Part shown: piece by piece, positions 16,598 through 48,700 of the stretch
Position numbering within the stretch: the first letter of the stretch is position 1
How the letters are laid out: each line of letters starts with the position of its first letter
From: Oikopleura dioica
Lineage: Eukaryota; Animalia; Chordata
Length of the DNA stretch: 64,000 nucleotides
Direction of reading: 5' to 3'
NCBI GenBank assembly: GCA_907165135.1
Contig: OU015567.1
Span: forward strand, 12,152,001 to 12,216,000
Position numbers and translations under genes: made by a program
The notes under the pieces: model-generated
What the model was told of the DNA's origin: nothing
Databases searched by the model: none
The model's input: only the letters and a program-made list of their open reading frames with translations

Positions 16598-19500
16598 ATG
16601 GCGGGTGGTTTCTTTGAAACGCTTGGCTCTCTGCAAGAGTCGCCGTTTGCAGACTACATGTGGGTCCTGATTCTCGGCTTTATCATTGCCTTTTTCTTGG
16701 CGTTCTCTGTTGGTGCGAATGATGTGGCGAATCCGTTTGGAACTTCTGTTGGATCTGGTGCTTTAACGCTTCTTCAAGGACTTGGTTTGATTTTAACCCA
16801 TTGACGCACGTCGACCAAAAAGTACAAAATGAGTCATTGGAATATTCATTTGCTCCCCCAAGGAATGCAGTGGAAATTTCGAGTCTATGCATATCCGTTG
16901 GCCGATTATCCGGCATAAATATAGACGCTACGGAAATTAAGGGCTCTTGAATTTGTTGAGTTTCGTAGGCTGCGTGGATTCCTTCTAAACAAAACCCCAA
17001 TGACAGTATGCATCGCCGCCACGTTTATGGAGTCACTGGGTGCCTTAACTTTAGGTGCGCTAGTAACAGTAAGAGAAAATGCTTTAATCGTATTCAGGCG
17101 GCGCTGTCTCGGACACTATCCGTAAAAAGATAGTGAACCCCGACCTCTACAACGAAACTATTCCTCAGGAATGGGCAAACAACATTTTTATGCAGAGAGC
17201 TTTAACCATTTACGCAAATTATATAACCGTACTCATCTTATGCTAAGGTTACTAATCAATGACACGAAGGTAGGTTAAGTACACACCCACCTTCTCAAAA
17301 TTTTGTATCATCATAGTAGACAAATAAAAAAATAACGAGGGTCATGAACTAATCATCAACGATTTACAGCTCCCGGTTCGCACAGGTTGAAACCTGTGCA
17401 AAAAATAGTTTTTCTTGCCCCAAAAAAGTTCATGATTGGACAAGCATGCGCGATGTTAGGAGCCGCTTCTTGGCAAATTCTCGCTTCTGTTCTGAAAATG
17501 CCTGTATCTGGAACTCACTCGATCGTCGGAGCTGTTTTAGGAAAGCGTTTAAAATATGAGACAAGTTTCTGAAATGCGGATAATTACAGTTGTGATAAAC
17601 GTGAACAATAAGGTTTCGCCCTTGTTTCGCGCAAAGGGCAAGGCATCTTTTGGACGACAATCTTCAAAATTGTACTTTCGTGGTTCATCTCGCCCATTTT
17701 GGCTGGCATTTCCGCTGTGGTTCTCTATGTTGGTCTCAAATTCCTCATCCTTTCGAGAGGCACGGGTTGTTCAATTCTGTGGCGAGCGGGGGCATTTCAA
17801 GCTGGCTAAAAATTTAAAAATTCGGCTTAATTCTGAACTAAGGGTCTTCCCTCCTTATCTTTGAACAACCAATGTTTCAGAAAATAAGACCGAGAGAGCC
17901 TTAATTCTCTTGCCATTTTTCTACGCTTTCGTGATATTGCTCAATGTGTTTTCGGTTCTGTTCACCGGCAGCAAGAGTATACTTCAAAACACGCTTCCTG
18001 TTTTGACCAAATATTATTCAGTCTATCAATTGGAAGTTCTAAAGACGTGGCACATGCTTCTCATATCGCTCGGCGCCGCGATGGTTGTTTTGATCGTCTT
18101 TTGGATCTTCATAACGCCCAAACAGCGGAAACAGATTCAGAAAATGAGGGAGGGTCCGTAAATCATTAATTGACTGATTGCAAACAGTGCTCGTATTTAG
18201 GAACGATCGAGGCGAAGGAAGGATGCCTGGATAAGCTGGAGAAGAAACTGGGCTGGGATGCAGAGACCAGGAAACAGAAACGATTAGGAAATGGTTTCTA
18301 ATTGAGCATGTAAATACACAATCATGAATTAAGGGAAGTTCCTTTTAGATAACTTTAGGGGTCCTTTTTGGGGTTTTATACTGATCGCCACTCATTGATC
18401 AATTTATATTATGGCTGCGAGACAACGATTTCTGTTCGTGATGAAAGATTACTGGAACATGATTCAAAATTAGAAATGAAAGCTCATGTTTACTAGTAAA
18501 GTTACTGGGGTTTGTAATGCTGAAATTTAGGTTTTAAAACAGCTCACAAATGGTCAAATAAAAAATTAATAATTTACCAATATTTTTTTCGGAAACCTCA
18601 TCACAAGAAAAAGAAGGGTGAGGCCCATTAGGTGTAAATCCCATTAGGTGTAAATACCCATTTAGTGTAATTTTCTAGAAGGTGTAACACACCTAATAGA
18701 TATTTACACCTAATGGGTATTTACACCTAATTGTTCAATATTTTTCAAAATTATTTTGTAAAAAAGGGATCGACACAAGCTGTCACACATTCTCGACGAC
18801 CCCCCAACGAGCATTTTTTTTTGGAAAAATATTTTTTTTTAATTCTTTCTAAATTGCACTCAAGAAACAAAAAACATCTTTTCGAGCAATTTTCGAAGTC
18901 AAAATTTGAAAATCGCGCGCTATCGATGAGTAATCGTGACAAGCTGAAGCGTTTCGTCATTTGCGCTCAATGAATTATCATTTTTCTTTCTTTTTTCAAA
19001 CGAGAAATCTTTCTGCGAAATATGTTTTCTTGCCGACGTTTATTTAGCTGAAGTTTAATCTATTTCCTGCAATTTTTTCTGATAAATTTTTATATTTAAA
19101 ACTAACCCGTAGGACCTTTAATGGTACCTTTTTTGATTACAGATAGATGATCAAATGTATATTCACAAAAGAGAAGAAGAATTGAAGCTTAATGAAAACA
19201 GCCCGGCTGAAAAATGATGAGTCCAGGAGCAGAAGAGAGATGCTACTCCGAATCAAGAGGAAAGTTAATATTCGCAGAAAAAGGAAGACCAGTTCATCAA
19301 ATCGTTGAGAATCTCCCTCGACCGCTGACTCATGAACTTGAGGTAATCTTTTAGAAGGGATTTTTGAAAATAAATTGTAAAATTCTAGCGTCGAACGCGA
19401 AATCCAGGCGGCGCTGATGACCAATTCCTCGAGAGCACGAACGTCTGTCACGAAGAACTTTCCTTCGCGGAAAATGTCGACCTTTTTGGCAAAGTTTTGA

Positions 19501-22500
19501 AGCCGATCCACTCGCTTTCTTGGGACCCGTTCAGCTCGCTTCTGGCGCTGAGTTCGAAGAACGCGACTTTTGTCTAAATCTGGGACTCGGATCGAGAAGA
19601 ACTCGTTCAGCGACAAGTTGGACAAGTTGTGTTGCCTTCGTCGGATTTAGTAACTCGGGAGAGAAACTGGTCGTTTCTGAAAGCGATTCTATCGCCATTT
19701 TTAGGTAAAACTGCGCTCAATTTATGACCAATAAACTGTTCTTTCAGCTGCGTAACCTGGACAAATGAAGGAACCTGGTGCAATTTGGAAGGCCCTGCTT
19801 TGAACGTCTGTTGGTCACATGACGATCAAAAGATCATTTTCGCCATCAAAAACAAGGCAAGTGCTCCGTCCATGTTTACGATTTCTCACCCTCATTTTAG
19901 ATCTTCATCGCGTCTTTCGAAGGAATCATGGGCCCGGACGAAGAAGCTCGCGAAATCGAAGGCTTCGAAGGCGACGTCCTCCAAATGTCCTGGCATAATC
20001 AACGCCTCGCAGTTGCGGTTGAGGGGCTCAGCGATACGCTTTTGTACTCGAAAGTAAATAACTGAATAAATCTCTGTTTCTGATTATGTTTATTTAAGAA
20101 AAAGAAGTACTGGAAAGTAAAATCTTACAGCTGGTTCGCCAAACATCAGGTACCAATCATTAATTCGCCAGTGGATATGCACGCTGCCAAATTTAGTCGT
20201 AAATTTTTGGAGCTCTCCTTGAGTTTTGTTGAATAGTTCTCCAGATTTAGGCACACGATGAAAAATAATCCATACGCCACATTAATGCCGCAGTCCATGT
20301 ATTTTTGTTTTGGGCATTTTTGATATATAGGAGCCCAGTCCTTTTCGTCTTCTTCGAATACTTCAAGAAACACTTAATTAAATTTCCAATTGCGCTTATG
20401 ATACGGTTAATTAATCTAATATTTTTTGAAATTTGCCTTGATAGACATCTCCATAATCTTCGAAATTCAAAGAGTCGTAAATTGTAAATATTTTTTCCTC
20501 TCTATCCGCCTTGACAATTATCCAGTGTCCAACTCGACCAGGGATAAAGACAGGGCAAACAAATCGTTTTATTTCTGATGGATGATAACCAGTACCAGCA
20601 AAATTTTTTCCTTGAAAGACCATTTGTGAGAATTTCGTGTCTTCAAGAATAATATCATTAGTTTGGTGTTGCTGTTGGTAATGTCTCATAATGATGATAA
20701 ACAAGTCCAGAATTTTGTCTTTTGTTTCTGTTCGAAGTTTGTAAAGTGGCAACAGATCTCGGACGCGAACTTCCTCCTTTTCTATTAAATTGACCAGCTG
20801 TCCTTCAGGCCATTTTTGTATATTTTTAGCGATATTTTCTGCTTCAAATGACATCTTGTAGCCATTAAACTTTTCAAACTTGAAAGTTGGAGTTTTGAAC
20901 ATTTTTCTATCAAGCTCGTTTTCGTATTTCATTGCATTTTCAGATTCCTCAAGAAGAATGGAATTGGACGATTCATCGTTGTTTGTTGCTGACTTAACTT
21001 CTGTGTATTCCGCGGCTTCTTCAAGGACATCAATACGACGCTTTTCTTCCTTGATTTCATCTGTTTTCCTCACAAAGGCGCCGCTATGCTCGCCCATTGC
21101 TGGAAGGTTCTCTTCGTTGATTTCATGACCAGGTGAGCCCTTTTTCTTTTTTGCGTTTTCTTCTTTCTTTTCGACCAAATTGAAATTCATTCCAGCGAGA
21201 AAAGTCTCAAACACTGGATTTCTGCGATCCAGGTCACAAAGGAACTTGTCAAGTGCGTCTTTTGAAGAGAGTAATCTTTTTGCCTCGGTCGACGCCCCTT
21301 TTAGATCTTTTGAAGTCGATATTACAAGCTTTTTCAGCTCAGCATGGCTTATTTTTAGAGGCATGGAAGAAGACTGTCGATCCAACTTTCGATAGAATCG
21401 TTGCATAGCGTTAAATTTAACCATCCATGTTGTACCAGTTTTTTGCGTTGTTTTTATTGGCCATTTTCCATCTTCAAGATAGCTCAACTCATCGTTAAAC
21501 GTCGTTTTCTTGCGATTTGTGATCACTTTGCAAAGCTCTTGAACATCAGGCTTAGACTGCAGACCGCGCAAGAGTCGTGCATTTACACTCTCGCTAAATC
21601 TTGGTTCATCGTTGATTTCAAAAGTTAATTGATATTTTAGAAACGAGTCAAGCTGTTGTTGTCGCTGGTCATGAAGCTGATGAGAAGCGCTGCTCAATTC
21701 GAATAAAAATAGAGAGACCGTGGTCGAAATCATGGAGAAAAATTTAGGTAAAAATGATCAAACCAAGCCTGGCGTTATTAGTGCTATCGATTTCCCCAGT
21801 TTTGATCATATTGGATGATTTATCGGCCCATTCACTAGGCTTGAATGTGGCGTCTTCGTTGAAATAGTTCTTGAGGAGGTAGTCGCGATAAGCGATCCAT
21901 CCATTCTTCTTTTTCTTCTTTTCGCCGTCATCAACATCCACCTTTTCTTTCGCGTTTTCGTCATCATCAACATCCACCTCTTTTTTCGCGTTTTCGTCAT
22001 CAACATCCATCGACTCAACAGCATTACCGTCGATTTCAAGATTTTTTTGGCACTCTTCTGTGATGATTTCGATGAAAACAGCCCGAAATTCATCTTGTCC
22101 AACAGGGAAATAAGGCGCAGAATACAGACAATTCCTTATTGATTTTATAAAATGAAATTAACTGACTTTCACAATACTAATCCCCCTTTTAGAAACCCTC
22201 AACGATGATCAATAGATCAGAACAAGAAGCTCAATCAAAAGGAAATGTTGAACATGATCCGTCACGGAGCGAGAAAGATCTTCGCTGGCGAATGCACAGG
22301 AGCTCTCGATGTCAATCTGAACATCGAGGAAGTCCTCAAAGCCGGAGAAAAGAAAAAGCTGAGCAAAACTACAAGTCCTTTATTAAGTCAACCAAGAGCG
22401 CAAACTAGCAACAAAAAAAAAATCAAGTTCATCGATACTATTTGCCAAGGTACGAAAATACGTCAGAATTTGATTTTGTGGACGATTTTTAATTGATTTC

Positions 22501-25500
22501 AAATAATACCCATTCTAAGCGCACAGTTATCAATACACACCTCCAATGAAGACCAAAAGCGCCTGTGTATTCTTCATTTTGAAGCTCAGTCAGAAAAAAT
22601 TCATCTTCCGCAGAAGATTTGCCCGAATGGCAACCGAAACCTCAAGCGAGTCGGAGAGCGGAAACTTATCTACAAATCAGCTGATGCTAAAAGATCAAAG
22701 GTAAAATAGCAAATGTTAGCAATCTCATTTTATAAAACCTTCCTGATGACTTGTGTCCGTTCTTCCTCCCAAGCCTTCAAGAGGCCTTCCTGTCCTGCCC
22801 GGCGTTTCCAGGATTGATACAAGTGGAAGGAACACTTTATATGAATAACGCCGGGCAGGACAGTTTTGTGAGCAGAGATAAAGGATTTCTCCCAGTCACT
22901 GCACACATAGCGAAGATTAGGGAGCCCATTCGTTTGGCTTTTGAAGAATGCCCATAACGCTTCATATGTTTCCGCTTTGTGATCTTTGAGGAGACAAGTC
23001 ATTCGGTCAACGCAATAACCCTTGACAGGTTTTTTAACGCACCGTCGATTTTTGATGATTACCCCGAAAACAAAAGCCCGAATAAGCGACACCAAGCGAC
23101 TTAAATAAAAAAAACCCGACCTTGAATTTGTTCGATTGATCGCGGCAAGGTTCGGTTACCATCACAAGTTGTGGCCACTGTTTTTTGACGGCACTCACGA
23201 CACTCATTATTCCATCTTTTCGAGTTTCATATTTTTTTTCAGATCACGAGCGAACTCACAAACAACCTGTCTCATCTACAATAACAACAACTCAACTGTA
23301 CTCAATAAAGGTAAAAAACTCTTCCTATATTGAGACTTGATGCATATTCACTTCGGCGAGCGTCATGGTCCAAAAAAAACACTATATTGTGGCGCGTGAA
23401 ATCGTTGCTAAGGGAAGGGAGTCGTGAATCCGCCCACCATCGTTGAAACATATATAAGAAGTGGCATTTTGTCGGCACAATTTGTTTTTCCTTGGCAGCG
23501 ACATTTGAGTTTTTAAATCGAAGCGCCGCTTTTTTGGCATTCTTTTTGGCATTTCCACCGAAAATTCGATTTGAAATTTCACTGTCAACGACTTCATCTT
23601 GCAACAATTCAAGCATTTTTCTCGAAGTCCGGGGCTGTGATTCAAGCTCGTTTCGACGGAATCTGTAAACCACATATCTTTTCCAACAATCAATCAGTGC
23701 ATTCAAATGACCACCAAAGCCACAAACTTCAAACGCCACATGAGATTTTCTTGGATCGTAGATTATAAAGTTTTCAACATCGTAAAATTCTTTCGATTTG
23801 TAATCAGAATTTCGTACAAGCACCGATATTTTCGCTTTACAGTTAGATGTTTCCAGATTCTTTCGAACGTGGTGGTTTTGACAGTTGAGATTCATTCTTT
23901 TCCATCCTTTTTAACAGATCTCAAAATGATAATTTTTGATTTCAGCGCACGAAAAAACCGTCACAATTCCAGCATTTTGGCAAGCAACAGTGCCAAAGCG
24001 ATGTCCACAACATGATTTACTCGATTGAGAAGCGTTTTAGGTAAGTTAATGCCCTAAAGATGCATGCCGTATATATTAAAGGGTAAATCATTCTATTTGA
24101 CCTGCTCCTGGATATTTTGCTGCTAGTTCTTTTGGAAGATCTTGAAAATCGTCTTTATTGCGCGGAGTATATGAGAACAATTCATTAGGTCCAAAGCAAA
24201 TAAAGAAAATGAAATTGACCATGCTTGTTGCCAATTGAACTGATATCAACTATTTAGTGCTCTCAAGATTTCAATTTGATGATGAAGAGTTCTCCGCGAA
24301 AGGGTTGCTCATTTCTGACCGAGGCTACTTGGAAGTTTATCCTTACGACAAATTGCAAGGTAATTCAATTATTAATAAAGAGCACTTTTCCTTTGGATCG
24401 GTACTGGTAGAATCATCGATGATTTCTTGAGTTTCAATCATCGTTGGGGGACGTTCAGGCGTAAGCAAGTCTTTGAGCTCAAGTTTAGCTTTTGGCGCTT
24501 TCTTAACCATGTCGCTGACTTCTTTTGTTAATTCCAAATCCTCATTCTTTTCATCATCCTTTTTACGCTTCATTTTTATCTCTAATAATAAGTAGACTCC
24601 TGCAGAAAATCGAGAAGTAAATGTTCAATTTTTATGAAAATATCTGTAGACTTAAGTTCTAGAAGCACTAGAATTCAAATTCATATAGTCAATATAATTG
24701 TATAACAGTGTTTTAAGCAAAACGACAACGCAGCTGCAAATGGATGAAGATCTCAATGAATACGAAAGTACCAGCTCCGAAAGCAGACCTCAACCTCAAA
24801 GATTCGATGGCATATCTTGAGAAATACTACAAGTCCTCCTCAGCAGCTACAGCGATTTCTTTTTTCACAAAGAGCGAGAAACTGACACAGAACTCCCGAC
24901 CACTTCTGCTCACCATGCTTAGTCACAAAGAAAACGACGCGATCGTGATTTAGTGCCTGAAATTGCTCCAATTTGGCTGCGTCACTTCAGAACTACTACG
25001 ACCTTTGTACAGTATTGTGCGCACGTCAAAATGTAAAGATGTCGTTAACGAGTCGATGATTATCCTGTCGCAGCTTAACTCGGAAAAGTCGATTGCAACT
25101 ATTGGCTCGTTAGGATTCATTCATGAGATTTGTCTCTTCATCGAAAAGTACAAATCAGGTACTGTCCTACTTCGTGACGAATTTCCTTCTGTTGTCAATT
25201 ATTTAGAGGGAAGTATTCAAAAACTGTGTAAAGGCATTATGATCGGCTTGTATAAACGAATCAAACGCAGAGCTCGCTTCCAAAGAAAAAGTTCGATGAA
25301 AAAGATTTTGATGGAGCAAGTAAATTCAAGTCCGATGCTTTGGTTCCTGCAGAAGTCGTTTCATTTTATAAAAATAAAGAGGCTTCAAGGACGATATTAT
25401 CAAAGAGCTTCCTTCTTGACCGGTTTTATTGAGAATCTCTTTTATTCGTATTATTTATATTCAGGCAGATCAAGGTTTTTTTTCTTGTTTTTCTTTGTAT

Positions 25501-28422
25501 TTTCTCGTCAGCAGTCGGATTTCGCAGAGTTTTTCGATCGAAAGAAATGAATTCGGCAACAATTTACACCAAATGTCCCAAAACAAAGAATTTTCACCCA
25601 ATAGGTGTAAGTTCCCATTAGGTGTAAATATCCATTAGGTGTGTTACACCTTCTAGAAAATTACACCTAATGGAATTTACACCTAATGGGTATTTACACC
25701 TAATGGGCCCTACTCGAAAAAGAAGAGAAAGAAGCCCTTGAATACTCGGCTGGAATCCCGATGACGGCGTAAGTAGGCCACAGAATGGCAATTTAGTCCC
25801 CCTCAGTAACCTCAGTAGACATTTCTGTTTCTTCTCAGTGACCGACGAAACGAGTCTTCTGGTTCGCTTTCATCACTTGTTTCGAAGATTTCGAACATCT
25901 CCACCGGCAGCAAAACGAGCATCTACGGAGTCGTCAAGAAGAACGACCTGATTCTCGAGGACGACGAAGAAAACGATGAGAGCCTAAACGATGGATCGGA
26001 GGGTGAAGGTGAGAAAAAGTTGCGTTTTACGTTAAACATGGTTCTTGATCAAGTTTTGGGCGATAAAACACAGCTAGCTCAATAGCAACTTTGATCCAAG
26101 AAAATCAACCACTAAAATAACTCGCTTATCAGCCTGAAATTCAAAAAATAACTACCAGATCGCGTAATCGCTTGACAAAATAATTGGATGATTTGCAAAA
26201 ATGAACTAAAAAATTGAACAGCTTGCAATCAGTACGCCAAAATAACCGGTTATAATCAGACGTCGTTCAAAAATTAAAGTACCGTAGACTGTACGGTCCA
26301 TAGAGAAAAGTCATCTTGAATAGACATCGCCTGAACAATTTCTAACCCCTCAAATTGAAGTTCAAAAGCGACCGGTTTGTAATGAACACTCTGACGGTCA
26401 AATAAGCTCTCTCACAAGAAATTATAGGCGCTTTGCCTCGGCACATGCCACAGGAATCTTCTCGCCGAAATTCCACATTATGCACATTCGCAAAAATACC
26501 GGCAGAGCGCTTGTTCTTTCTTCTGAATTCACTTCGCATTCAGTCGAAAAACGCTAAATGTGTTTAACCTATGCTCGGGCGAAAGTGAAATCGGGATTTG
26601 ATTCAACTAACCTCCGGGTTCCCACGCGTGACAGCAGCTCAGTTGCGTGAGGCGACAAATGACTGTAGAAGCTATTTACAATTAACTCTAAGTCTTCTAG
26701 AGATGCGATACATGTTCAGCCACTTACAAGCATTCTCCGCCTGCTTAGACGCATTCGCACACGGCGGCAACGACGTCGGGTAAGCACCACTGTAAATACC
26801 GATTTAAATTTGCTCGTTCGAGAATAAGAACCGGATCAAGACAAAGGGTTCTCACGTTCTCAGTCGCCGGATAAGCTCCAATTGACAAATTTCGCTTTCT
26901 TGAAAGAAATTACACGAGGATTATTTTAACCACTATTTTGTAGGAACTCCATTGGTCCAGTTCTAGCGCTCTGGTCGGCCTTTTCAGCTGGAAATCTTCT
27001 TTTCGGGCAGGGTCATTATTGAAAAACGGGATTATTGAACCTTGCAAAAATTGAGGATGAATATGAGCGAATATTGTGACCCCGAAAAAAGCTGATGCTC
27101 CTGATCCATGGATTATTGCGTACGGTTGTGCTGGCATCGTGTTGGGATTATGGGTGCTCGGGCGACGTGTGATTGAGACTGTTGGAGAAGATATTGCCGA
27201 AATCACCCCTGCAAGGTAAAAACTGCAGTTGCCACTTTTCCCTTGCCGAAATTGCAATGGCTCTAATTTTTAACTCCGGTCGAGCGAGAATCACAAATTA
27301 TTGACACAGGGTTTCATGAAGCCAAACAACCTTCACATTTAAAATCGCGATATGCGCGGCGACCCAATAATTTCGCGAACTTTACGGGCGAATTACACGG
27401 GCACCATCATTCCGAACACGCGCCGACTCCGTTTTTAGAAAAATGACTCGGATCTAAGTAAGCACAAGATTTGAAAAAATGGCTCGACTCAGCAAGTTCC
27501 ATAAATTCCAGAGTCATGACATTTCCATTGACGGAAAAAAGAGGTCCAGTTTTAATTGTACAAAGTTTGTGGGTAGCAATTAATTTCCGTGTGTTGGAAA
27601 TGTAACGTGTAAATTTCGCGTATTGAATTTTCGCCTCTCAAAATGGAAAAACAGCGAAACTGAATCTCTCGTAATCTTCACGTCTTCAGGTGCACTCGGC
27701 GGTACCATACACGGAGTTCACTTTTAGAACTTTGCGCGCCAGACAAAATATTGTTTCTGCACTGACACACATACTTGATAAAGAAATGGCTGAATCTGAC
27801 GTTGTAACCAGGTTTTAGAGGCTTCTCGATCGACATCATGGCCGGGCTGACTGTCTTGTTGGGATCCAACTATGGAATTCCTCTTTCGACAACTCATTGC
27901 AAGGTATAAATTCGGGGCTGCCAGAAAAATTTTAGAGTTTTCGAAAAGCTTTTCTAAAGCTATAATTTTTAAGTTAAGTTAGAGTACAGGCAGAGGTGCT
28001 TTTACTGCGCGAAAATCCTATCTCGCTCTAAAATAAAAGTTTCGTTGGCTTAGCGAACCATTATTATTGCCTGCGTGAAATTTCCAAAAATATTCTAGCA
28101 CTCGCTCGTTTCATTCAAAAGAGATGCAGCATATTTTCTGAATGGAAATCTTTCGCAAGGGCAATTCTAAAGCTCCGGTTTTTATATTTTTCTTAAAATA
28201 AACATGCAACAAAGAAAAGCCCTCCAATTTCGTAATCCTTTCCTCTACCCTTATTTATGTTTAATCAAGGTGGGAGCGGTGGTCGCCGTCTCTTTAATTC
28301 ACAATCGCAATGCAGTTTCATGGAGAACGTTCGGCAACATTGCCTGGGCCTGGATCGTAACACTTCCTGTTTCCGGCGCTATTTCCGCCTTCTTTTACTG
28401 GCTTATCATCAAGTTGCTGTAA
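16598..28422 (+). CDS. SLC20A: SLC20/PiT sodium-phosphate symporter, multi-exon, interrupted by a MULE insertion
   Basis: [16 protein letters not shown] (N-terminal PHO4 signature); [12 protein letters not shown]; [10 protein letters not shown]; GRRVIETVG; [10 protein letters not shown]; [18 protein letters not shown]. All match remembered PiT1/2 motifs. Confidence 0.95.
19390..20056 (+). pseudogene. AAAS: WD40 gene fragment resembling Aladin, inside the MULE
   Basis: [23 protein letters not shown]; [10 protein letters not shown]; [29 protein letters not shown]; [10 protein letters not shown]. In-frame TAA at 19575-19577, one frameshift, intron 19705-19747 retained. The Aladin identity is from memory. 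Confidence 0.55.
20146..22100 (-). CDS. Ulp1/SENP-like (peptidase C48) protease with long charged N-terminal region, carried by the MULE
   Basis: His motif GHW (20522-20530), Asp motif YDSL, and in the next exon [10 protein letters not shown] (Cys 20290-20292), probably joined by a 64-nt GC-AG intron. Confidence 0.8.
22215..22370 (+). pseudogene. ISWI/SNF2H-like fragment (post-helicase region) inside the MULE
   Basis: [35 protein letters not shown] resembles ISWI DQN..KDEMLQMIRHGA..VF..DIDGILERGAKK. A stop lies just upstream; no helicase exons. Confidence 0.55.
22500..24573 (-). pseudogene. Decayed MULE DDE transposase
   Basis: [46 protein letters not shown] (D2 and CxxH motif); [18 protein letters not shown] (D1-like); N-terminal Y.F..C..C.A.I zinc-finger-like part. 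In-frame TAA at 23911-23913 and an apparent frameshift. Confidence 0.8.
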
Positions 28423-39700: not shown

Positions 39701-42700
39701 CTAAAAATCATCATTGAGCAGATCTTCGAGGTTTTGAAGACTCGTGTCGGTCTCCATTTCGGACGTTTCAATCGCCGTCGGAGTTACAGAAATTGAAGAT
39801 TCCATCGATTGATCCCGCTCGTAGTTGGCAATGTCTGCCAGTTCTGATGAGTCGTGAGCTGAAAATTCAATTGAAACATGGGAAACATCAAAAGCTTCAC
39901 CTTTTTGCTTGTGATTTCCCTTTGGATCGAGCTGATTAGCAATTTGCATATGCTTGTTGCCAAGATATTTCTGCCCTAAATGATGGTATGCCTTTGCCAT
40001 GGTGTAATTGACAAGGGCCAGTTTGGGGTGAATCTTGTCAAGATGTATCAACTCGTTGAGCGCTTTCTGATAGTCGCCGAGGTTATAATACATGTTCGCT
40101 TTCATGAAGAGCGCGTTCGCTTGTGTTGGATCAAACTGCAGCGCCTAGAAACAAACGTACTATATGTAGGGATATCGCACAAATTTTCAGGTACCCAAAA
40201 AAGGGTCCATGCCAATTTTTAGATTGATGATTTAGTAGAACTTTGTACGAGGAGTTCAATGCTGCCAAAATCATCCCATAATAATGAGTCATTTTCGTAA
40301 AAATGACGTTCAAAGAGCTCATTTTTGGATCAGTACGAGAACTCTTATTCAGTAACGATTTTATATTTTTTCCTTATAGATATTGAGCTGAGAAATCTAA
40401 ATCTGCAAAAAAATTCACTGACGCACCTCGCGTTTTGAAAATATGAATTTTTAAAGTTTTCCGAGGTGAATTCTAAGCGGGGTTGCGTCATTTTGGAGGC
40501 GGCCGCCAGGGGGCGCGCGCGCTGCATGGCCAAGCTAGCCCGACTCACATTCTTTTCTCTTCACAATTTTATGCTATTTTTCATAAAATTGCATATTTCT
40601 GGAGCTTTTAAGATGATTTTTTTTCGATGAATAAGGATTTTAATTGATAATAAAAATATTTCATAAAAAATGAGTTTCTAATTATAAATTATAGCTTAAT
40701 TAGATAGTATTTTTCAATTTTTCACAGGTTAAGAATGAGTTTTATCATAAAACTTTTATGAAAATGAACCTAAAGTAACTCTCACGCAAAAGAAATTCCC
40801 CGCAACAAATTACGGCGTCGACGCTGATTGCTTGCGAATTCCGATTTCTTACATAAAATCAACTGACAGCAAGAGCCGAAAACCGAAGGTGCCGACAAAG
40901 CTTCACCTAACGAGTCGAATACTTTTTGTGAGTGAATGAAGGTCTTTACTGGAAGCTCGGTTTTTCCTACTATAAAGTCGAGTAAGACTACTTTCGGAAG
41001 CTATTTTAGAACATTTTCTATCGAATCAGTGGAGAAATCGTGCTACGTTTGATAGTGAGCTCGGAGATAAATGTAATTCCTGGAGCATTTGGTTTGTGAA
41101 TAACGAGCAGTATGGAGTCGATACTGTCAGTTCCTCCTTCAGACTTGAGCGTCAAAGTGTAAACGATTCCAAAAACCTTTGATTTCTACAATTTCTCCGA
41201 CATCATTTTTGACCGCTTAGGTAACTTTGGTACACATCTTTTTCGGCGATTTTTTTTTCGTCAGATGCTTGACCATTTTCTTTTGCAAATCGGACATTTT
41301 TGGATTCAACTGGAGAAAGCCCTGGCCGGGTGTTGGCGCTTTAGCCGCGGCGAGTGCGGCTATGTTGGCTTTTTGCGGCTATTCGGGCTTGTTTATCGGA
41401 GATGGAAGAACTTTGTTCTGGAGCGGGATTCTTTTGGGATTCGGCAGTAGGATCCGGGCATTTGAAATTTGCGAGGGCCGTTTCAGCCCCGTTCCTTCAT
41501 TTTTGAATTTAAGGGGCTTGACGGCCCTTCGGGCCGTTTCAGCCCCGTTCCTTCATTTTTGAATTTAAGGGCTTGACGGCCCTTCGGGCCGTTTCAGCCC
41601 CGTTCCTTCATTTTTGAATTTAAGGGCTTGACGGCCCTTCGGGCCGTTTCAGCCCCGTTCCTTCATTTTTGAATTTAAGGGCTTGACGGCCCTTCGGGCC
41701 GTTTCAGCCCCGTTCCTTCATTTTTGAATTTAAGGGGCTTGACGGCCCTTCGGGCCGTTTCAGCCCCGTTCCTTCATTTTTGAATTTAAGGGGCTTGACG
41801 GCCCTTCGGGCCGTTTCAGCCCCGTTCCTTCATTTTTGAATTTAAGGGGCTTGACGGCCCTTCGGGCCGTTTCAGCCCCGTTCCTTCATTTTTGAATTTA
41901 AGGGGCTTGACGGCCCTTCGGGCCGTTTCAGCCCCGTTCCTTCATTTTTGAATTTAAGGGGCTTGACGGCCCTTCGGGCCGTTTCAGCCCCGTTCCTTCA
42001 TTTTTGAATTTAAGGGGCTTGACGGCCCTTCGGGCCGTTTCAGCCCCGTTCCTTCATTTTTGAATTTAAGGGGCTTGACGGCCCTTCGGGCCGTTTCAGC
42101 CCCGTTCCTTCATTTTTGAATTTAAGGGGCTTGACGGCCCTTCGGGCCGTTTCAGCCCCGTTCCTTCATTTTTGAATTTAAGGGCTTGACGGCCCTTCGG
42201 GCCGTTTCAGCCCCGTTCCTTCATTTTTGAATTTAAGGGGCTTGACGGCCCTTCGGGCCGTTTCAGCCCCGTTCCTTCATTTTTGAATTTAAGGGCTTGA
42301 CGGCCCTTCGGGCCGTTTCAGCCCCGTTCCTTCATTTTTGAATTTAAGGGCTTGACGGCCCTTCGGGCCGTTTCAGCCCCGTTCCTTCATTTTTGAATTT
42401 AAGGGCTTGACGGCCCTTCGGGCCGTTTCAGCCCCGTTCCTTCATTTTGAATTTAAGGGGCTTGACGGCCCTTCGGGCCGTTTCAGCCCCGTTCCTTCAT
42501 TTTTGAATTTAAGGGCTTGACGGCCCTTCGGGCCGTTTCAGCCCCGTTCCTTCATTTTTGAATTTAAGGGGCTTGACGGCCCTTCGGGCCGTTTCAGCCC
42601 CGTTCCTTCATTTTTGAATTTAAGGGCTTGACGGCCCTTCGGGCCGTTTCAGCCCCGTTCCTTCATTTTTGAATTTAAGGGGCTTGACGGCCCTTCGGGC

Positions 42701-45700
42701 CGTTTCAGCCCCGTTCCTTCATTTTTGAATTTAAGGGGCTTGACGGCCCTTCGGGCCGTTTCAGCCCCGTTCCTTCATTTTTGAATTTAAGGGGCTTGAC
42801 GGCCCTTCGGGCCGTTTCAGCCCCGTTCCTTCATTTTTGAATTTAAGGGGCTTGACGGCCCTTCGGGCCGTTTCAGCCCCGTTCCTTCATTTTTGAATTT
42901 AAGGGGCTTGACGGCCCTTCGGGCCGTTTCAGCCCCGTTCCTTCATTTTTGAATTTAAGGGCTTGACGGCCCTTCGGGCCGTTTCAGCCCCGTTCCTTCA
43001 TTTTTGAATTTAAGGGGCTTGACGGCCCTTCGGGCCGTTTCAGCCCCGTTCCTTCATTTTTGAATTTAAGGGGCTTGACGGCCCTTCGGGCCGTTTCAGC
43101 CCCGTTCCTTCATTTTGAATTTAAGGGGCTTGACGGCCCTTCGGGCCGTTTCAGCCCCGTTCCTTCATTTTTGAATTTAAGGGCTTGACGGCCCTTCGGG
43201 CCGTTTCAGCCCCGTTCCTTCATTTTTGAATTTAAGGGGCTTGACGGCCCTTCGGGCCGTTTCAGCCCCGTTCCTTCATTTTTGAATTTAAGGGGCTTGA
43301 CGGCCCTTCGGGCCGTTTCAGCCCCGTTCCTTCATTTTTGAATTTAAGGGCTTGACGGCCCTTCGGGCCGTTTCAGCCCCGTTCCTTCATTTTTGAATTT
43401 AAGGGGCTTGACGGCCCTTCGGGCCGTTTCAGCCCCGTTCCTTCATTTTTGAATTTAAGGGCTTGACGGCCCTTCGGGCCGTTTCAGCCCCGTTCCTTCA
43501 TTTTGAATTTAAGGGCTTGACGGCCCTTCGGGCCGTTTCAGCCCCGTTCCTTCATTTTTGAATTTAAGGGGCTTGACGGCCCTTCGGGCCGTTTCAGCCC
43601 CGTTCCTTCATTTTTGAATTTAAGGGCTTGACGGCCCTTCGGGCCGTTTCAGCCCCGTTCCTTCATTTTTGAATTTAAGGGGCTTGACGGCCCTTCGGGC
43701 CGTTTCAGCCCCGTTCCTTCATTTTTGAATTTAAGGGGCTTGACGGCCCTTCGGGCCGTTTCAGCCCCGTTCCTTCATTTTTGAATTTAAGGGGCTTGAC
43801 GGCCCTTCGGGCCGTTTCAGCCCCGTTCCTTCATTTTTGAATTTAAGGGCTTGACGGCCCTTCGGGCCGTTTCAGCCCCGTTCCTTCATTTTTGAATTTA
43901 AGGGGCTTGACGGCCCTTCGGGCCGTTTCAGCCCCGTTCCTTCATTTTTGAATTTAAGGGCTTGACGGCCCTTCGGGCCGTTTCAGCCCCGTTCCTTCAT
44001 TTTTGAATTTAAGGGCTTGACGGCCCTTCGGGCCGTTTCAGCCCCGTTCCTTCATTTTTGAATTTAAGGGGCTTGACGGCCCTTCGGGCCGTTTCAGCCC
44101 CGTTCCTTCATTTTTGAATTTAAGGGGCTTGACGGCCCTTCGGGCCGTTTCAGCCCCGTTCCTTCATTTTTGAATTTAAGGGCTTGACGGCCCTTCGGGC
44201 CGTTTCAGCCCCGTTCCTTCATTTTTGAATTTAAGGGGCTTGACGGCCCTTCGGGCCGTTTCAGCCCCGTTCCTTCATTTTTGAATTTAAGGGGCTTGAC
44301 GGCCCTTCGGGCCGTTTCAGCCCCGTTCCTTCATTTTTGAATTTAAGGGGCTTGACGGCCCTTCGGGCCGTTTCAGCCCCGTTCCTTCATTTTGAATTTA
44401 AGGGCTTGACGGCCCTTCGGGCCGTTTCAGCCCCGTTCCTTCATTTTTGAATTTAAGGGCTTGACGGCCCTTCGGGCCGTTTCAGCCCCGTTCCTTCATT
44501 TTTGAATTTAAGGGCTTGACGGCCCTTCGGGCCGTTTCAGCCCCGTTCCTTCATTTTTGAATTTAAGGGGCTTGACGGCCCTTCGGGCCGTTTCAGCCCC
44601 GTTCCTTCATTTTTGAATTTAAGGGGCTTGACGGCCCTTCGGGCCGTTTCAGCCCCGTTCCTTCATTTTTGAATTTAAGGGGCTTGACGGCCCTTCGGGC
44701 CGTTTCAGCCCCGTTCCTTCATTTTTGAATTTAAGGGGCTTGACGGCCCTTCGGGCCGTTTCAGCCCCGTTCCTTCATTTTTGAATTTAAGGGGCTTGAC
44801 GGCCCTTCGGGCCGTTTCAGCCCCGTTCCTTCATTTTTGAATTTAAGGGGCTTGACGGCCCTTCGGGCCGTTTCAGCCCCGTTCCTTCATTTTGAATTTA
44901 AGGGGCTTGACGGCCCTTCGGGCCGTTTCAGCCCCGTTCCTTCATTTTTGAATTTAAGGGGCTTGACGGCCCTTCGGGCCGTTTCAGCCCCGTTCCTTCA
45001 TTTTTGAATTTAAGGGGCTTGACGGCCCTTCGGGCCGTTTCAGCCCCGTTCCTTCATTTTTGAATTTAAGGGGCTTGACGGCCCTTCGGGCCGTTTCAGC
45101 CCCGTTCCTTCATTTTTGAATTTAAGGGCTTGACGGCCCTTCGGGCCGTTTCAGCCCCGTTCCTTCATTTTTGAATTTAAGGGGCTTGACGGCCCTTCGG
45201 GCCGTTTCAGCCCCGTTCCTTCATTTTTGAATTTAAGGGGCTTGACGGCCCTTCGGGCCGTTTCAGCCCCGTTCCTTCATTTTTGAATTTAAGGGGCTTG
45301 ACGGCCCTTCGGGCCGTTTCAGCCCCGTTCCTTCATTTTTGAATTTAAGGGGCTTGACAAAGGCTTGGAACTCTGAATTGATCAATCTCAGTTTTGTCCC
45401 CAACCCCGCCCACACCCATTGTTTTAAAAATTCATATTATTTAAGCTCTTTTCTTTTGTTATGGTTTTGTTCTACCCGCCGATCTAGAAGGATAGATGCA
45501 ATATTTTTCGCTTCTTCGGAGCAAAATGAGCTGCGTCTCGTGTTATCAAAGTCTCAGAGACAGAAAATCTTGAGATTTACTGGATGTTAGATTTTCTGGA
45601 AAAGGCGATTTTCTGGAACTTCTTGAAAATCGTATATTCCAGAAAATCTAACTTCCAGAAAATCGCCTCTCTCGGCGCCAATCGGCCAACGACTCCGCCA

Positions 45701-48700
45701 TGAACGTCTCGGTCGACGATTACCCAATGATAAGGGCACTTTTCCGCGTCCATTCTTGAGCACAGCTTTCCATTAGGCATCGGAGCATCGGAGGTGTAGA
45801 AACATTCCACCTGACAAGGATAGAACGTAATCGGAAGACCTTCCCGAAAAGTGAGTCACCCTCATTTGGGCACAATGAGTTCTCGCATCGTCCTCGACCG
45901 CAAAAACAGTTCGGAAAGGATCTTTACTTTCTGCGCGCATTTTTGCCTCGCTGATTCCACAACAGAAAAGAACTTCCAAGATGCGCTTTTATCTCTTGTT
46001 GATTCCTTGAGAGGGCAGTTTTCGAGAAATAGCATGCAAAAATAACGCTTCTTCTACCTCTTGGACAGATGAGCCGCGAAAATCTTGATTTGATGCTTTC
46101 CGAAACTTTGAAGTATTTCACGAAATTCCTAACAAAAAACTTTACACGCAACCTTCAAAAAATCTTTACAGCGTCATCTCCCATAATTTATGAATAGATG
46201 GTAAATAAAGTGGTCTTCAAGGATTATTTTGGTCCAAGAATCATTGATTTTCAAGGTTCCAGTCCCGAGAAATTATCATTTTACTGAACCTGTTTGAGCC
46301 TTTTTGTGAGCAAGGCTCTCAGGAGCGTCCACCAATCAGCGCGCAGCCGAAAACAGAAAAGCGCCACAAGCGTCGAGAGAGAAAAAAACAACTCCCGAAA
46401 GTTCATTTCTAGCGATTGCTAGGTGCGTCAGTGAATTTTTTTGCAGATTTGGAATCCTGGTCCAAATTTATGTTAGTCTATCATTTTCAATTTCCAAACT
46501 TTTGAAGTTTTCGCTCTGATCGAAAAAATCACCCCTTGACACATCATTTTTACGAAAATGACTGATAATTATGAAATGATTTCTACACCATTGGAATCCT
46601 CGTCCAAAGTTCTACTAGTTCATCAATCTAAAAATTACTCAGGACCCTTTTTTCGGGTACCTGAAAATTTGTGCGATATCCCTAACTATATGAGGCTAGA
46701 ATATGTCAGCTTTCATACTTTATTGAAGCATTGGAGAGCTTTATTCAGTTCTCCTTTCTTGTGGCGAATCTGGCCCATGTATGACCAAACAGTAGCGTTC
46801 TTTGGATAGTATCTCAGCGCTAGAAAGCAGTTGTAATTAAGATTCAGTTGTAAATTTCCCAACCTGTTAATAAATAACTCTCTGCAAGGTCGTACTTCTC
46901 TGCATTGATGAAAACATCACCAATGCTCGTCAACGCATTGACAAATCTCGCCTTGTGCTTTATTGCGTTCTTGAAGCACTTGATTGCGCTGTCGTTTTCT
47001 TCCTTCAGAACATACTCGTGTCCCAACAAGTGGAAAGCATAGTGTCGACATTCTGTTTGCTGACCAGCAGCAAAATCGGAATCGCAGATTTGCACAGCGC
47101 GCGAGAAATATGTCGTTGCTTTGTCGCGCCGCTCATTGTACGAGAACAGATTTCCAAGGATGCACATAGTTTCTGGACGGTTTCTGGCCTTGGTAACGAA
47201 GCGATTTGCGAGATGCTCGAGGGATATTTGATCTTTCAAATGTTGACAAAGATAAAATTCATACATATTTATAAAACTATTATTCAACCAGTTCCTTGTA
47301 ATCTATACAAACAGGAAGCATAGAACTCCATTCCAACAACGCGATACGGTTCCAGTTCCAAAAGCTCTTTGTACTGCACCTTAGCTAATTGGAACTTTTG
47401 ATCGTCCATGTATGTTCGGGCAATCTCATTCAGAACCCAGCCTGTTTGTCTCTGCGAAGGTGGAAGAGAGTTGAGCATCGAACGCGCCTAGGGGCAGGTT
47501 GTTCATAATTGACTTGACTTATTATTTTACCTCGACAAATCTCTGTTCTGATCTTGCCAAATACGCATGTCCCATGATTCTGTAATACTTGACCAACTCG
47601 ATGGCCGACCTCTTCGACTTCATGTCGTCCTGTAAGCTCTTGTAAATTGTAAATTAAAATCCTTATTATTTGTCAAAAACAGCGACAAAAGCGTTATGTT
47701 TTTGCAGCTTTGACGGCGGACACTTACGGGTACCTGCTTCCTGAACTCGTCAAATTGGCGGTTTAGTCTTTCACGCGAAAGAGATTTATCAGGATCTTCG
47801 GAAGGCTCCGTCTCTGGTTGATTCTGACTCGTCAAGCGAGGAATACGAGGCGAGGAGGAGCTTGTGTTCACTGATGATCTGGTTACTCTGCGGGTCGGCA
47901 TCTCCGAATTCTCTTTCGACCCCTTTTCGTCGACTTTCATCGTCGATTGACGAGGAATGTTGACGTTTGGACGACTGAAAAGCCTTCTACCAGGCTGCTG
48001 AAGCTCTGATCTTTCTATTCTGCTTCCAGCTGTCTTCTTCTTTATCTTTTTTATTTCTTGCATGTGACTTCTCAATTCTTCTGTATTTTGCCCAAGCGCT
48101 ATAAATTTCCATAAATTTTATAATTAAATGAGGCTTACGAGTTGTTTTATCCGTGTGCATGGCAATTGGAGAAAAGTTATCGAAACTCGTCAGACTTGAA
48201 TGCAGAACAGTCGGGGTAGAGACAGTCCTTTGAATTGGTGTAACCGCATCGGCGCTCGTGGCAGTAGAAGCTCCGACGTTTGTGTTAGTGACTGGTTGAA
48301 GAGCTTGTTTCGCTTGTTTTCGAAAGGGAATGTCCTTTAAAAAACGGTTAGGGAGTGCGAAAAAACGTTTGGCTTACTTTAAGTCTTTGGTCAAAAGCAG
48401 AAGAAGGCTCGCGATAAGGCGATATACAGTCCAAGAGATTAAAGTATTTGTGTGTTGTACAATCGAGGATTTTATCCGGATCGCCACCCTAAATGAAAAT
48501 TGATTGATTCAAAATAGCTCATAAAAAATACCTTTCCCATGTCGCAAAGTTCTTGATACGGCGTAAACAGAAACGGATTGTGTTTCAGTGCCATTTTGTA
48601 GCACTCTGACGCGCGGTCGGCGAGTCCCTGCCTTTTGTGAAGATAACCAGCGAGGGAGAGGGCATAGGCAGCAGAGTCTTCGAACTCGTGCTGAAAGGCG

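What the first reader, a model, noticed from the sequence alone, without database searches (positions are those of the whole stretch)
18553..25770. Exonic insertion into SLC20 that may splice itself out: the TE end rebuilds an acceptor
Seen: removing the element plus one TSD restores an open exon, [14 protein letters not shown], in phase with both neighbouring exons. The insertion lies 8 nt after the AG (18606-18607), so the TSD duplicates the acceptor G. At the right end, CTAAT (a branch-point-like motif from the TIR repeat), CCCTACTC and C|G give a CG acceptor at 25715-25716 that would restore the protein exactly. Canonical AGs at 25721-25722 and 25724-25725 would remove only 2 or 3 codons in frame from the variable loop. 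Inference: the 7-kb TE may be absorbed into a GT-CG or GT-AG intron, an Introner-like route to new non-canonical introns.
Basis: partly seen in the sequence, partly recalled or inferred. Interest (0 to 1): 0.82.

Follow-up and report, generated by a model that had tools for sequence, protein, structure and literature searches.

The report
Young transposon splitting a phosphate-transporter exon
A 7.1-kb jumping gene sits inside a coding exon of the phosphate-transporter gene of this tunicate. It is on only one of the carrier animal's two gene copies and is missing from another animal. It is therefore most simply a recent broken allele hidden by a good copy, and no RNA data could be obtained to show that it is spliced out.

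Summary
The sequence observation mostly holds. A 7.1-kb Mutator-like transposon (18616/7-25715) has about 115-nt inverted ends and a perfect 9-10-nt target duplication. It interrupts a coding exon of an SLC20/PiT gene. Removing the element plus one duplication gives an open 534-aa protein, 91% identical to transcript-derived Oikopleura dioica orthologues.

One detail is wrong. The real donor is at 18294, in the same phase.

DNA contigs show the exact empty site in an animal from another study. In the carrier run, filled and alternative haplotypes each have about half the depth, so it is heterozygous. The reference comes from one highly heterozygous male with merged haplotypes.

No RNA from a carrier could be laid, so splicing is untested. 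The native acceptor is intact, and read-through stops after four codons. The element's own GTGAG donor cannot restore the frame. The in-frame AGs follow from the host's Glu/Lys codons. All 14 acceptors in this gene are AG, so a CG acceptor has no support.

The closest known routes are spliceosomal removal of exonic transposons and SOS splicing. The scan has reported similar exonic transposons elsewhere in this genome.

The parts
16598..28422 (+). SLC20/PiT sodium-phosphate transporter gene. It has 15 exons, and exon 9 is split by the element. The empty-allele CDS is 1605 nt (534 aa).
   Evidence: tblastn of the O. dioica orthologue P0002 finds every exon. The spliced model is open and 91% identical to P0002 and P0151. 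The orthologues carry Pfam PF01384.
18201..18293 (+). Exon 8 (...[14 protein letters not shown] + G). It is the true upstream neighbour of the interrupted exon, with its donor GT at 18294.
   Evidence: An RNA contig of X20 confirms intron 18154-18200. Transcript-derived orthologues join this exon directly to EKEEKE. The SNP 18292 T/C is synonymous, AAT/AAC.
18294..18607 (+). Intron 8, 314 nt in this haplotype, GT-AG, with 140-230-nt indel polymorphism.
   Evidence: Joints 18340>18538 and 18371>18586 in X3 and 18340>18574 in X1. X3 depth falls to 7.8 in bin 18351-18549.
18607..18616 (+). Left copy of the target-site duplication, GAAAAAGAA(G). 18607 is the G of the native acceptor, and 18608-18616 are the first 9 nt of exon 9.
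18617..25715 (-). 7.1-kb Mutator-like DNA transposon whose genes lie antisense to SLC20. The first base may be 18616 if the duplication is read as 9 nt.
   Evidence: Inverted ends plus the duplication. A partial Pfam MULE domain at 22733-23155(-), E 2e-5, below the curated cut-off. An X1 contig runs 18262-18644 across the left junction with 0 differences.
18617..18745 (.). Left inverted end. It holds the donor-like G|GTGAGG (GT at 18618), the in-frame stop TGA at 18619-18621, three AG|GTGTAA repeats and the acceptor-like TTTTCTAG| ending at about 18677.
   Evidence: read-through product ends EKEG*.
25586..25715 (.). Right inverted end. It holds the acceptor-like CCTTCTAG| at about 25656, repeated CTAAT motifs (the last at 25700-25704) and the terminal GGGCCCTACTC.
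   Evidence: The two ends co-fold at -173 kcal/mol, against -124.5 for the two local hairpins and -82 for a shuffled arm.
25716..25725 (+). Right copy of the target-site duplication. The formal 'CG' is at 25715-16, and AGs lie at 25721-2 and 25724-5.
25726..25768 (+). Remainder of exon 9 (..[15 protein letters not shown]), with donor GT at 25769. Further in-frame AGs are at 25730-1 and 25733-4, and an out-of-frame AG is at 25726-7.
   Evidence: X3 contigs read on from 18616 directly into this sequence.

Best explanation
This is a very recent, still polymorphic insertion of an active, low-copy Mutator-like transposon. It landed 9 nt inside exon 9 of the apparently single SLC20/PiT gene of an Oikopleura dioica lineage. 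The animal that carries it has it on one chromosome copy only, with an uninterrupted allele on the other.

By default the carrier allele is a loss-of-function allele. The untouched native acceptor (18607) is used, and the transcript runs into the element. Translation then stops at TGA after Glu-Lys-Glu-Gly, giving 297 aa that lack the second transporter half.

The allele appears in the reference because the assembly was built from one highly heterozygous male and its haplotypes were merged. It is not there because the gene tolerates the insertion.

Shown here: the anatomy, the empty allele, heterozygosity, and an otherwise intact gene. Inferred: what the carrier transcript looks like.
For: - Empty site: two X3 contigs from another study read 18616 then AGAAAGAAGCCCTaGAATACTCGGCTGGAA, which is window 25726 onwards.
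- Carrier run X1: the filled-junction contig 18262-18644 has depth 171. The alternative-haplotype contig has depth 158.6 and its 43-nt right side ends exactly at 18616. The two sum to 329.7, the summed depth of both alleles at SNP 18292, where each allele lies on one of these two contigs.
- The gene is otherwise intact at 534 aa, and read-through stops at residue 297.
- The element's GTGAG donor (18618) cannot be joined in frame to any AG near the right end (my enumeration; one search lists the AG positions).
- The reference comes from a single male with about 3.6% heterozygosity, merged with HaploMerger2 (PMC8008620).
- Only one O. dioica-named SLC20 appears among the top hits.
Against: - No RNA from a carrier was seen, so the fate of the transcript is inferred.
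- X1 may be the source animal or a culture-mate, so only one carrier is known.
- The X1 empty junction is inferred from where the alignment ends. The matching loose-end row was among the rows not shown.
- Exonic DNA transposons are removed from 90-100% of host mRNAs in C. elegans (PMC12779559). Assuming a null allele may therefore be too pessimistic.
- The insertion lies in the cytoplasmic loop, where small in-frame scars could be tolerated.
Confidence: 0.66

Rival explanations
1. The element is removed by SOS-type splicing. Its two inverted ends pair in the pre-mRNA, and a spliceosome-independent cut-and-ligate system (AKAP17A, CAAP1, RTCB) excises it at several non-GU-AG sites in or near the ends. 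This yields a mixture of in-frame and out-of-frame mRNAs with small scars. The in-frame ones would give a working transporter because the site is in the loop.
For: - The ends can pair over about 115-125 nt. Co-folding gives -173 kcal/mol, against -124.5 for the two local hairpins and -82 +/- 4 for shuffled controls.
- The element is exonic, which is the condition under which Tc1, Tc3 and Tc4 are excised. Intronic copies are not excised (PMC12779559).
- The system is reported in both worm and human cells.
- Rescue is expected mainly in poorly conserved regions such as this loop.
Against: - There is no RNA evidence here.
- The system has not been shown in tunicates, and its factors were not looked for in this genome.
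- The element is 7.1 kb, while the tested elements are a few kb or less (sizes from my own knowledge).
- Each end also folds into its own stable hairpin, which forms first during transcription.
- The insertion is only 9 nt from a 3' splice site.
- Heterozygosity removes any need for rescue.
Confidence: 0.16
2. The spliceosome skips the native acceptor and joins the upstream donor (really 18294) to an acceptor rebuilt at the right end. A CG at 25715-16 would give exact restoration. An AG at 25721-2 or 25724-5 would lose 2 or 3 codons. The 7.1-kb element would thus become part of an enlarged intron.
For: - CTAAT fits the branch-site pattern CTRAY, and 25721-2 is the first AG after it.
- AAG| acceptors behind purine runs are used in this gene (CCCCAAAAAAG| at 17428, CCCCGAAAAAAG| at 27091).
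- Four of the five nearby AGs are in frame.
- A strong donor-like GTGAGG lies 10 nt after the native acceptor and might hinder use of that acceptor (inference).
- A sister larvacean turned MITE insertions into non-canonical introns (Henriet 2019, via PMC11282704).
Against: - The native intron, its branch region and its AG are unchanged and lie 7.1 kb closer to the donor. Median introns are about 49 nt in this species (PMC8008620).
- All 14 acceptors in this gene are AG, and the species' non-canonical class is GA-AG, which varies at the donor (PMC7072748).
- The element offers many competing sites, for example a 60-nt GT...TTTTCTAG mini-intron at 18618-18677 and CCTTCTAG| at about 25656.
- A GT-CG product cannot be told apart from empty-allele mRNA.
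- The in-frame AGs belong to the host exon, not to the element.
Confidence: 0.09
3. The insertion is an assembly artefact. A transposon copy was wrongly placed in the exon by a chimeric long read or a haplotype-merging error.
For: The assembly merges two haplotypes of a very polymorphic genome.
Against: - A short-read-derived contig of X1 crosses the left junction with no differences, although only 28 nt of it lie inside the element.
- The element is flanked by a perfect 9-10-nt duplication of the exact empty-site sequence seen in X3. This is the signature of real transposition.
Confidence: 0.02

Closest known systems
SOS splicing of exonic DNA transposons (Zhao et al., Nature 2025, PMC12779559)
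   Same: A cut-and-paste transposon with base-pairing inverted ends sits in a coding exon, within a poorly conserved part of the protein. Any removal would occur at non-GU-AG sites near the ends, and only some products would be in frame.
   Different: Nothing is shown here at the RNA level. The host is a tunicate rather than worm or human cells. The element is a 7.1-kb Mutator-like element, not a Tc1/mariner element. The host factors were not examined.
Spliceosomal removal of transposons from mutant pre-mRNAs (C. elegans Tc1; maize Ds, Mu and dSpm alleles). Recalled from the literature and cited within PMC12779559 as its refs 6-9.
   Same: Cryptic donors and acceptors in or next to the element's ends, plus host AGs, could remove most of the element and sometimes keep the frame.
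   Different: Those cases were demonstrated by cDNA and phenotype. Here the element's best donor (18618) gives only frameshifted products, and rescue would require skipping an intact native acceptor.
Introners, and MITE-derived non-canonical introns of Fritillaria borealis (Huff 2016; Henriet 2019; review PMC11282704)
   Same: The host is a larvacean with a permissive spliceosome. The proposal also has the target duplication help to build a splice site.
   Different: Introners are short, occur in hundreds to thousands of copies and are seen spliced. This element is 7.1 kb, autonomous-looking and present in about 3-5 copies. It is polymorphic, and in this gene only donors deviate from the rule, never acceptors.
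Other young exonic transposon insertions reported by this scan in the same genome (s1-378087, s1-322901, s1-360581, s1-409160)
   Same: The genome and situation are the same: a transposon sits in a coding exon on the reference haplotype, other animals have the site empty, and no RNA is available.
   Different: Here heterozygosity in the carrier run was seen directly. The neighbouring exon model was also corrected with transcript-derived orthologues.

Membership tests
Mutator-like element (MULE) | 9-11-bp target-site duplication | tested here: met
   GAAAAAGAA(G) flanks both ends. The empty site in X3 holds one copy.
Mutator-like element (MULE) | Long terminal inverted repeats | tested here: met
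   About 90% identity over about 115 nt, with the termini GGGTGAGG and GAGTAGGG differing slightly.
Mutator-like element (MULE) | MULE/MuDR DDE transposase | tested here: inconclusive
   Pfam PF10551 matches profile positions 31-98 of 99 at E 2e-5 and 25.3-25.8 bits, below the 27.6 cut-off. The rest of the domain lies in other exons.
Introner / transposon-derived intron | Removed from mature mRNA by splicing | not testable with these tools
   No carrier RNA was available. X24 gave 2 reads and the X20 contig ends at 18265.
Introner / transposon-derived intron | Short, high-copy family found mainly as introns of many genes | tested here: not met
   The element is 7.1 kb. Its depth in X1 is about 470, against about 165 per haplotype, so about 3 haploid copies. 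Scan notes report 4-5 copies.
Introner / transposon-derived intron | Element or duplication supplies functional splice sites that keep the frame | tested here: inconclusive
   The element's GTGAG donor gives only frameshifts. The in-frame AGs come from host Glu/Lys codons. The 'CG acceptor' has no precedent among the 14 AG acceptors of this gene.
SOS-splicing substrate | Exonic position and inverted ends able to base-pair | tested here: met
   The insertion lies 9 nt into exon 9. Co-folding gives -173 kcal/mol, against -82 for shuffled controls.
SOS-splicing substrate | AKAP17A/CAAP1/RTCB-dependent excision seen in RNA | not tested
   No RNA was available. No reliable query sequences for the factors were at hand.
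SLC20 / PiT (PHO4) transporter | Two PHO4 repeats with GANDVAN-type motifs around a variable loop | tested here: met
   The model contains [10 protein letters not shown] and HGGNDVGNSIG. It is 91% identical to PF01384-bearing O. dioica proteins, including a cluster member named CBY21049.1.

The most novel reading that the evidence does not exclude
In carriers, the 7.1-kb Mutator-like element is taken out of the SLC20 pre-mRNA, giving a substantial share of in-frame transcripts. This could happen through pairing of its inverted ends (SOS-type splicing) or through the first AG after the CTAAT motif of the right end. The exonic insertion would then be nearly neutral and would be an intron at the moment of its birth in a chordate.
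Probability: 0.15. Interest if true: 0.75.

Novelty: new member of a known kind. Interest (0 to 1): 0.3.

Why it matters
O. dioica and its relatives are the animals in which intron turnover and non-canonical splicing are most extreme, and a sister genus has turned transposon insertions into introns.

This is a segregating exonic insertion in an apparently single-copy, probably essential transporter gene. A synonymous SNP two bases from the donor tags the carrier allele, which makes the insertion a ready natural test case. It could show whether a chordate removes DNA transposons from mRNA, and by which route.

As it stands, the locus mainly shows something else. Exonic transposons in this reference genome can be explained by heterozygous alleles kept during haplotype merging. 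That is a caution for every 'self-splicing transposon' candidate in this assembly.

Tried and rejected
- **Reads on both junctions.** The interval is 7.2 kb, the limit is 6 kb and only one call is allowed, so I laid the left side. The right-end acceptors were therefore not examined in reads.
- **Single-cell RNA run X24.** It gave 2 poorly matching reads and no information.
- **Metatranscriptome run X20.** Its contig confirms two introns but ends 28 nt before the donor.
- **Okinawa-lineage full-length or fragment gene model or cDNA.** The protein collection holds none, so I could not see how the public annotation treats the locus.
Rejected; see the observation check.
- **An exact 'GG-AG' intron (18617-25725) after a 9-nt micro-exon.** It would restore the mRNA exactly, but a far better GT lies one base further on and gives a +1 frameshift.
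- **All joins of donor 18618 to AGs at 25722-25734.** None is in frame.
- **Pfam on the 448-aa ORF (20414-21757, minus strand).** No hit, so the protease assignment made by other notes was not confirmed here.
- **A source for HaploMerger2 keeping the longer allele.** None was found, so this remains my recollection only.
- **Searches of earlier findings by words.** Two searches returned nothing.

Full report
**What is there**

The window carries an SLC20/PiT phosphate-transporter gene on the + strand, from ATG 16598 to the stop at 28422. A search with exon 1 returned a 537-aa protein, P0002. P0002 comes from cDNA-length contigs of about 1.9 kb. Its 90% cluster contains CBY21049.1, 'unnamed protein product [Oikopleura dioica]'.

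tblastn of P0002 finds every exon in the window. With the element removed, the spliced model is an open 534-aa protein, 91% identical to P0002 and P0151. The organism is therefore an O. dioica lineage distinct from the Bergen one. Earlier scan notes name it as the Okinawa reference. I did not verify that directly.

**The element**

- The element runs from 18617 (or 18616) to 25715, about 7.1 kb.
- Its inverted ends share about 90% identity over about 115 nt. They are built from the 16-mer CCCATTAGGTGTAAAT in both orientations.
- It is flanked by GAAAAAGAAG at 18607-18616 and 25716-25725. This is a 9-nt duplication with 1 nt of ambiguity.
- On the minus strand it encodes a partial Pfam MULE transposase domain at E 2e-5, just under the curated cut-off.
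- Together these features indicate a Mutator-like element lying antisense to the host gene.
- Depth in run X1 is about 470, against about 165 per haplotype. The contigs match almost perfectly, which points to about three haploid copies of a young family. Scan notes report 4-5 near-identical copies.

The following hold as described:
- the native acceptor AG at 18606-7;
- the duplication of its G;
- the CTAAT / CCCTACTC / C|G arrangement at the right end;
- the two in-frame AGs.

I also found two more in-frame AGs, giving exon starts at 25732 and 25735. Four of the five AGs in that stretch are in frame.

This is not a property of the transposon. The upstream exon ends with the first base, G, of a split codon. 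Every Glu codon (GAA or GAG) that follows a codon ending in A therefore offers A|G as an acceptor, and using it simply regenerates a Glu codon. A Glu/Lys run must behave this way.

The upstream neighbour is wrong.
- X3 contigs join 18340 to 18538, which removes its acceptor.
- X3 contigs also join 18371 to 18586, which removes its donor.
- The second X1 haplotype joins 18340 to 18574.
- X3 depth in bin 18351-18549 falls to 7.8, against about 150 beside it.

The preceding candidate exon cannot be joined in frame with GT-AG sites to the exon ending at 18293. Ten transcript-derived O. dioica proteins read ...R(R/Q)K(R/K)Q|EKEEKEGLEYSAG. They join the orthologue of exon 8 directly to the interrupted exon.

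The true donor is 18294 (GGAAATG|GTTTCT), and intron 8 is 314 nt in this haplotype.

**Population evidence**

X3 is organism A from a different study. Two of its contigs run up to 18616 and continue with AGAAAGAAGCCCTaGAATACTCGGCTGGAA. That is window 25726 onwards with one synonymous change. This is exactly the empty site predicted by removing the element plus one duplication.

X1 is the best DNA holder, and may be the source animal or a culture-mate.
- A 383-nt contig covers 18262-18644 without a single difference. It crosses the left junction, although only 28 nt of it lie inside the element. Its depth is 171.
- A second contig starts at the same SNP bubble (C instead of T at 18292), with depth 158.6. 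It carries the short intron variant, and its 43-nt right arm ends exactly at 18616.
- The two depths sum to 329.7, the summed depth of both alleles at SNP 18292, where each allele lies on one of these two contigs.

I read this as one filled and one unfilled chromosome in that animal. The explicit loose-end row for X1 was among the rows not shown, so the 'empty' state of the second haplotype is inferred.

The published reference was made from one male with about 3.6% heterozygosity, and its haplotypes were merged with HaploMerger2 (PMC8008620). I recall that this program tends to keep the longer allele. I could not find a source for that.

**What the carrier allele should do**

Intron 8, with its branch region and AG, is untouched. 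Using it gives Glu-Lys-Glu-Gly and then TGA at 18619-21. The product is 297 aa and lacks the second PHO4 half.

The left end of the element starts with a strong donor look-alike, AGG|GTGAGG (GT at 18618).
- No AG near the right end restores the frame from that donor. The offsets are +4, +1, -1, -5 and -8.
- An exact 'GG-AG' excision (18617-25725) is formally possible. It would compete with the much better GT one base away.
- The same end also offers TTTTCTAG| about 60 nt further on. That would make a typical 60-nt O. dioica mini-intron and leave the rest of the element in the message.

In its favour:
- Five of the 14 acceptors of this gene are AAG|. Two of them sit behind purine runs much like the right end (CCCCAAAAAAG| at 17428, CCCCGAAAAAAG| at 27091).
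- 25721-2 is the first AG after the CTAAT motif.

Against it:
- The native site is 7.1 kb closer, in a genome whose median intron is 49 nt.
- The gene's non-canonical sites are all donors: GA at 16779, 17169 and 17541, GC at 17760 and GG at 27006. They are never acceptors. This agrees with the published GA-AG class of this species (PMC7072748). A CG acceptor has no support.
- An mRNA made through GT-CG would be identical to the mRNA of the empty allele.

**A better-founded alternative for non-canonical removal**

SOS splicing was described in 2025 (PMC12779559). In C. elegans and human cells, exonic DNA transposons are cut out of mRNA independently of the spliceosome. Excision occurs at varied non-GU-AG sites in or near the inverted ends.
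- It is triggered by pairing of those ends.
- It requires AKAP17A, CAAP1 and RTCB.
- Gene function is rescued only when the product is in frame and the scar lies in a poorly conserved region.

Here the ends can pair. Co-folding gives -173 kcal/mol, against -124.5 for the two separate hairpins and -82 +/- 4 for a shuffled arm. The site is also in the cytoplasmic loop. Nothing is known about this system in tunicates, and I could not test for it.

**RNA**

The one same-species RNA run (single-cell, 2026) gave two reads. A metatranscriptome contig confirms introns 17977-18021 and 18154-18200 but stops at 18265. No Okinawa-lineage cDNA or gene model is in the protein collection. The splicing hypothesis is therefore untested.

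**Verdict**

This is a real, young, polymorphic Mutator-like insertion in a coding exon. It is heterozygous in its only known carrier. The most economical reading is a recessive loss-of-function allele captured by a single-animal assembly. Rescue at the RNA level remains possible, at roughly one chance in four over both routes, and would be interesting.

The same situation has already been reported by this scan at several other loci of this genome. The concept is established in other organisms. I rate interest at 0.3.

Noticed in passing
window 16779, 17169, 17541, 17760, 27006: Five of the 14 introns of this SLC20 gene appear to start with GA (three), GC or GG instead of GT. This was deduced by matching the cDNA-derived orthologue exactly. 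All acceptors are AG. The share is well above the roughly 11% genome average reported for this species.
   Followed up: partly
window 18341-18585: Intron 8 differs between haplotypes by 140-230-nt indels with different end points in X1 and X3. The long form is linked to the transposon-bearing haplotype. Whether the extra DNA is itself a small mobile element was not examined.
   Followed up: partly
window 21692-21728: A metatranscriptome contig (X20) and two X3 contigs match only these 37 nt inside the transposon, then diverge on both sides (behind 21728: GTTGCGCTTGAA...). This looks like an exon of a host gene from which the element captured a piece.
   Followed up: no
window 18617-18745 and 25586-25715: Each inverted end is itself an internal palindrome centred on TTCTAGAA. 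On its own, each end folds into a hairpin of -57 to -67 kcal/mol.
   Followed up: partly
window 40145-46718 and just beyond the window end: Earlier notes list two more transposon insertions in or next to genes within about 45 kb of this one. One is a hAT-like element in a CDC27 intron, and the other is an exonic element 1.6 kb past the window. Such a density would fit retention of insertion alleles in the merged reference.
   Followed up: no
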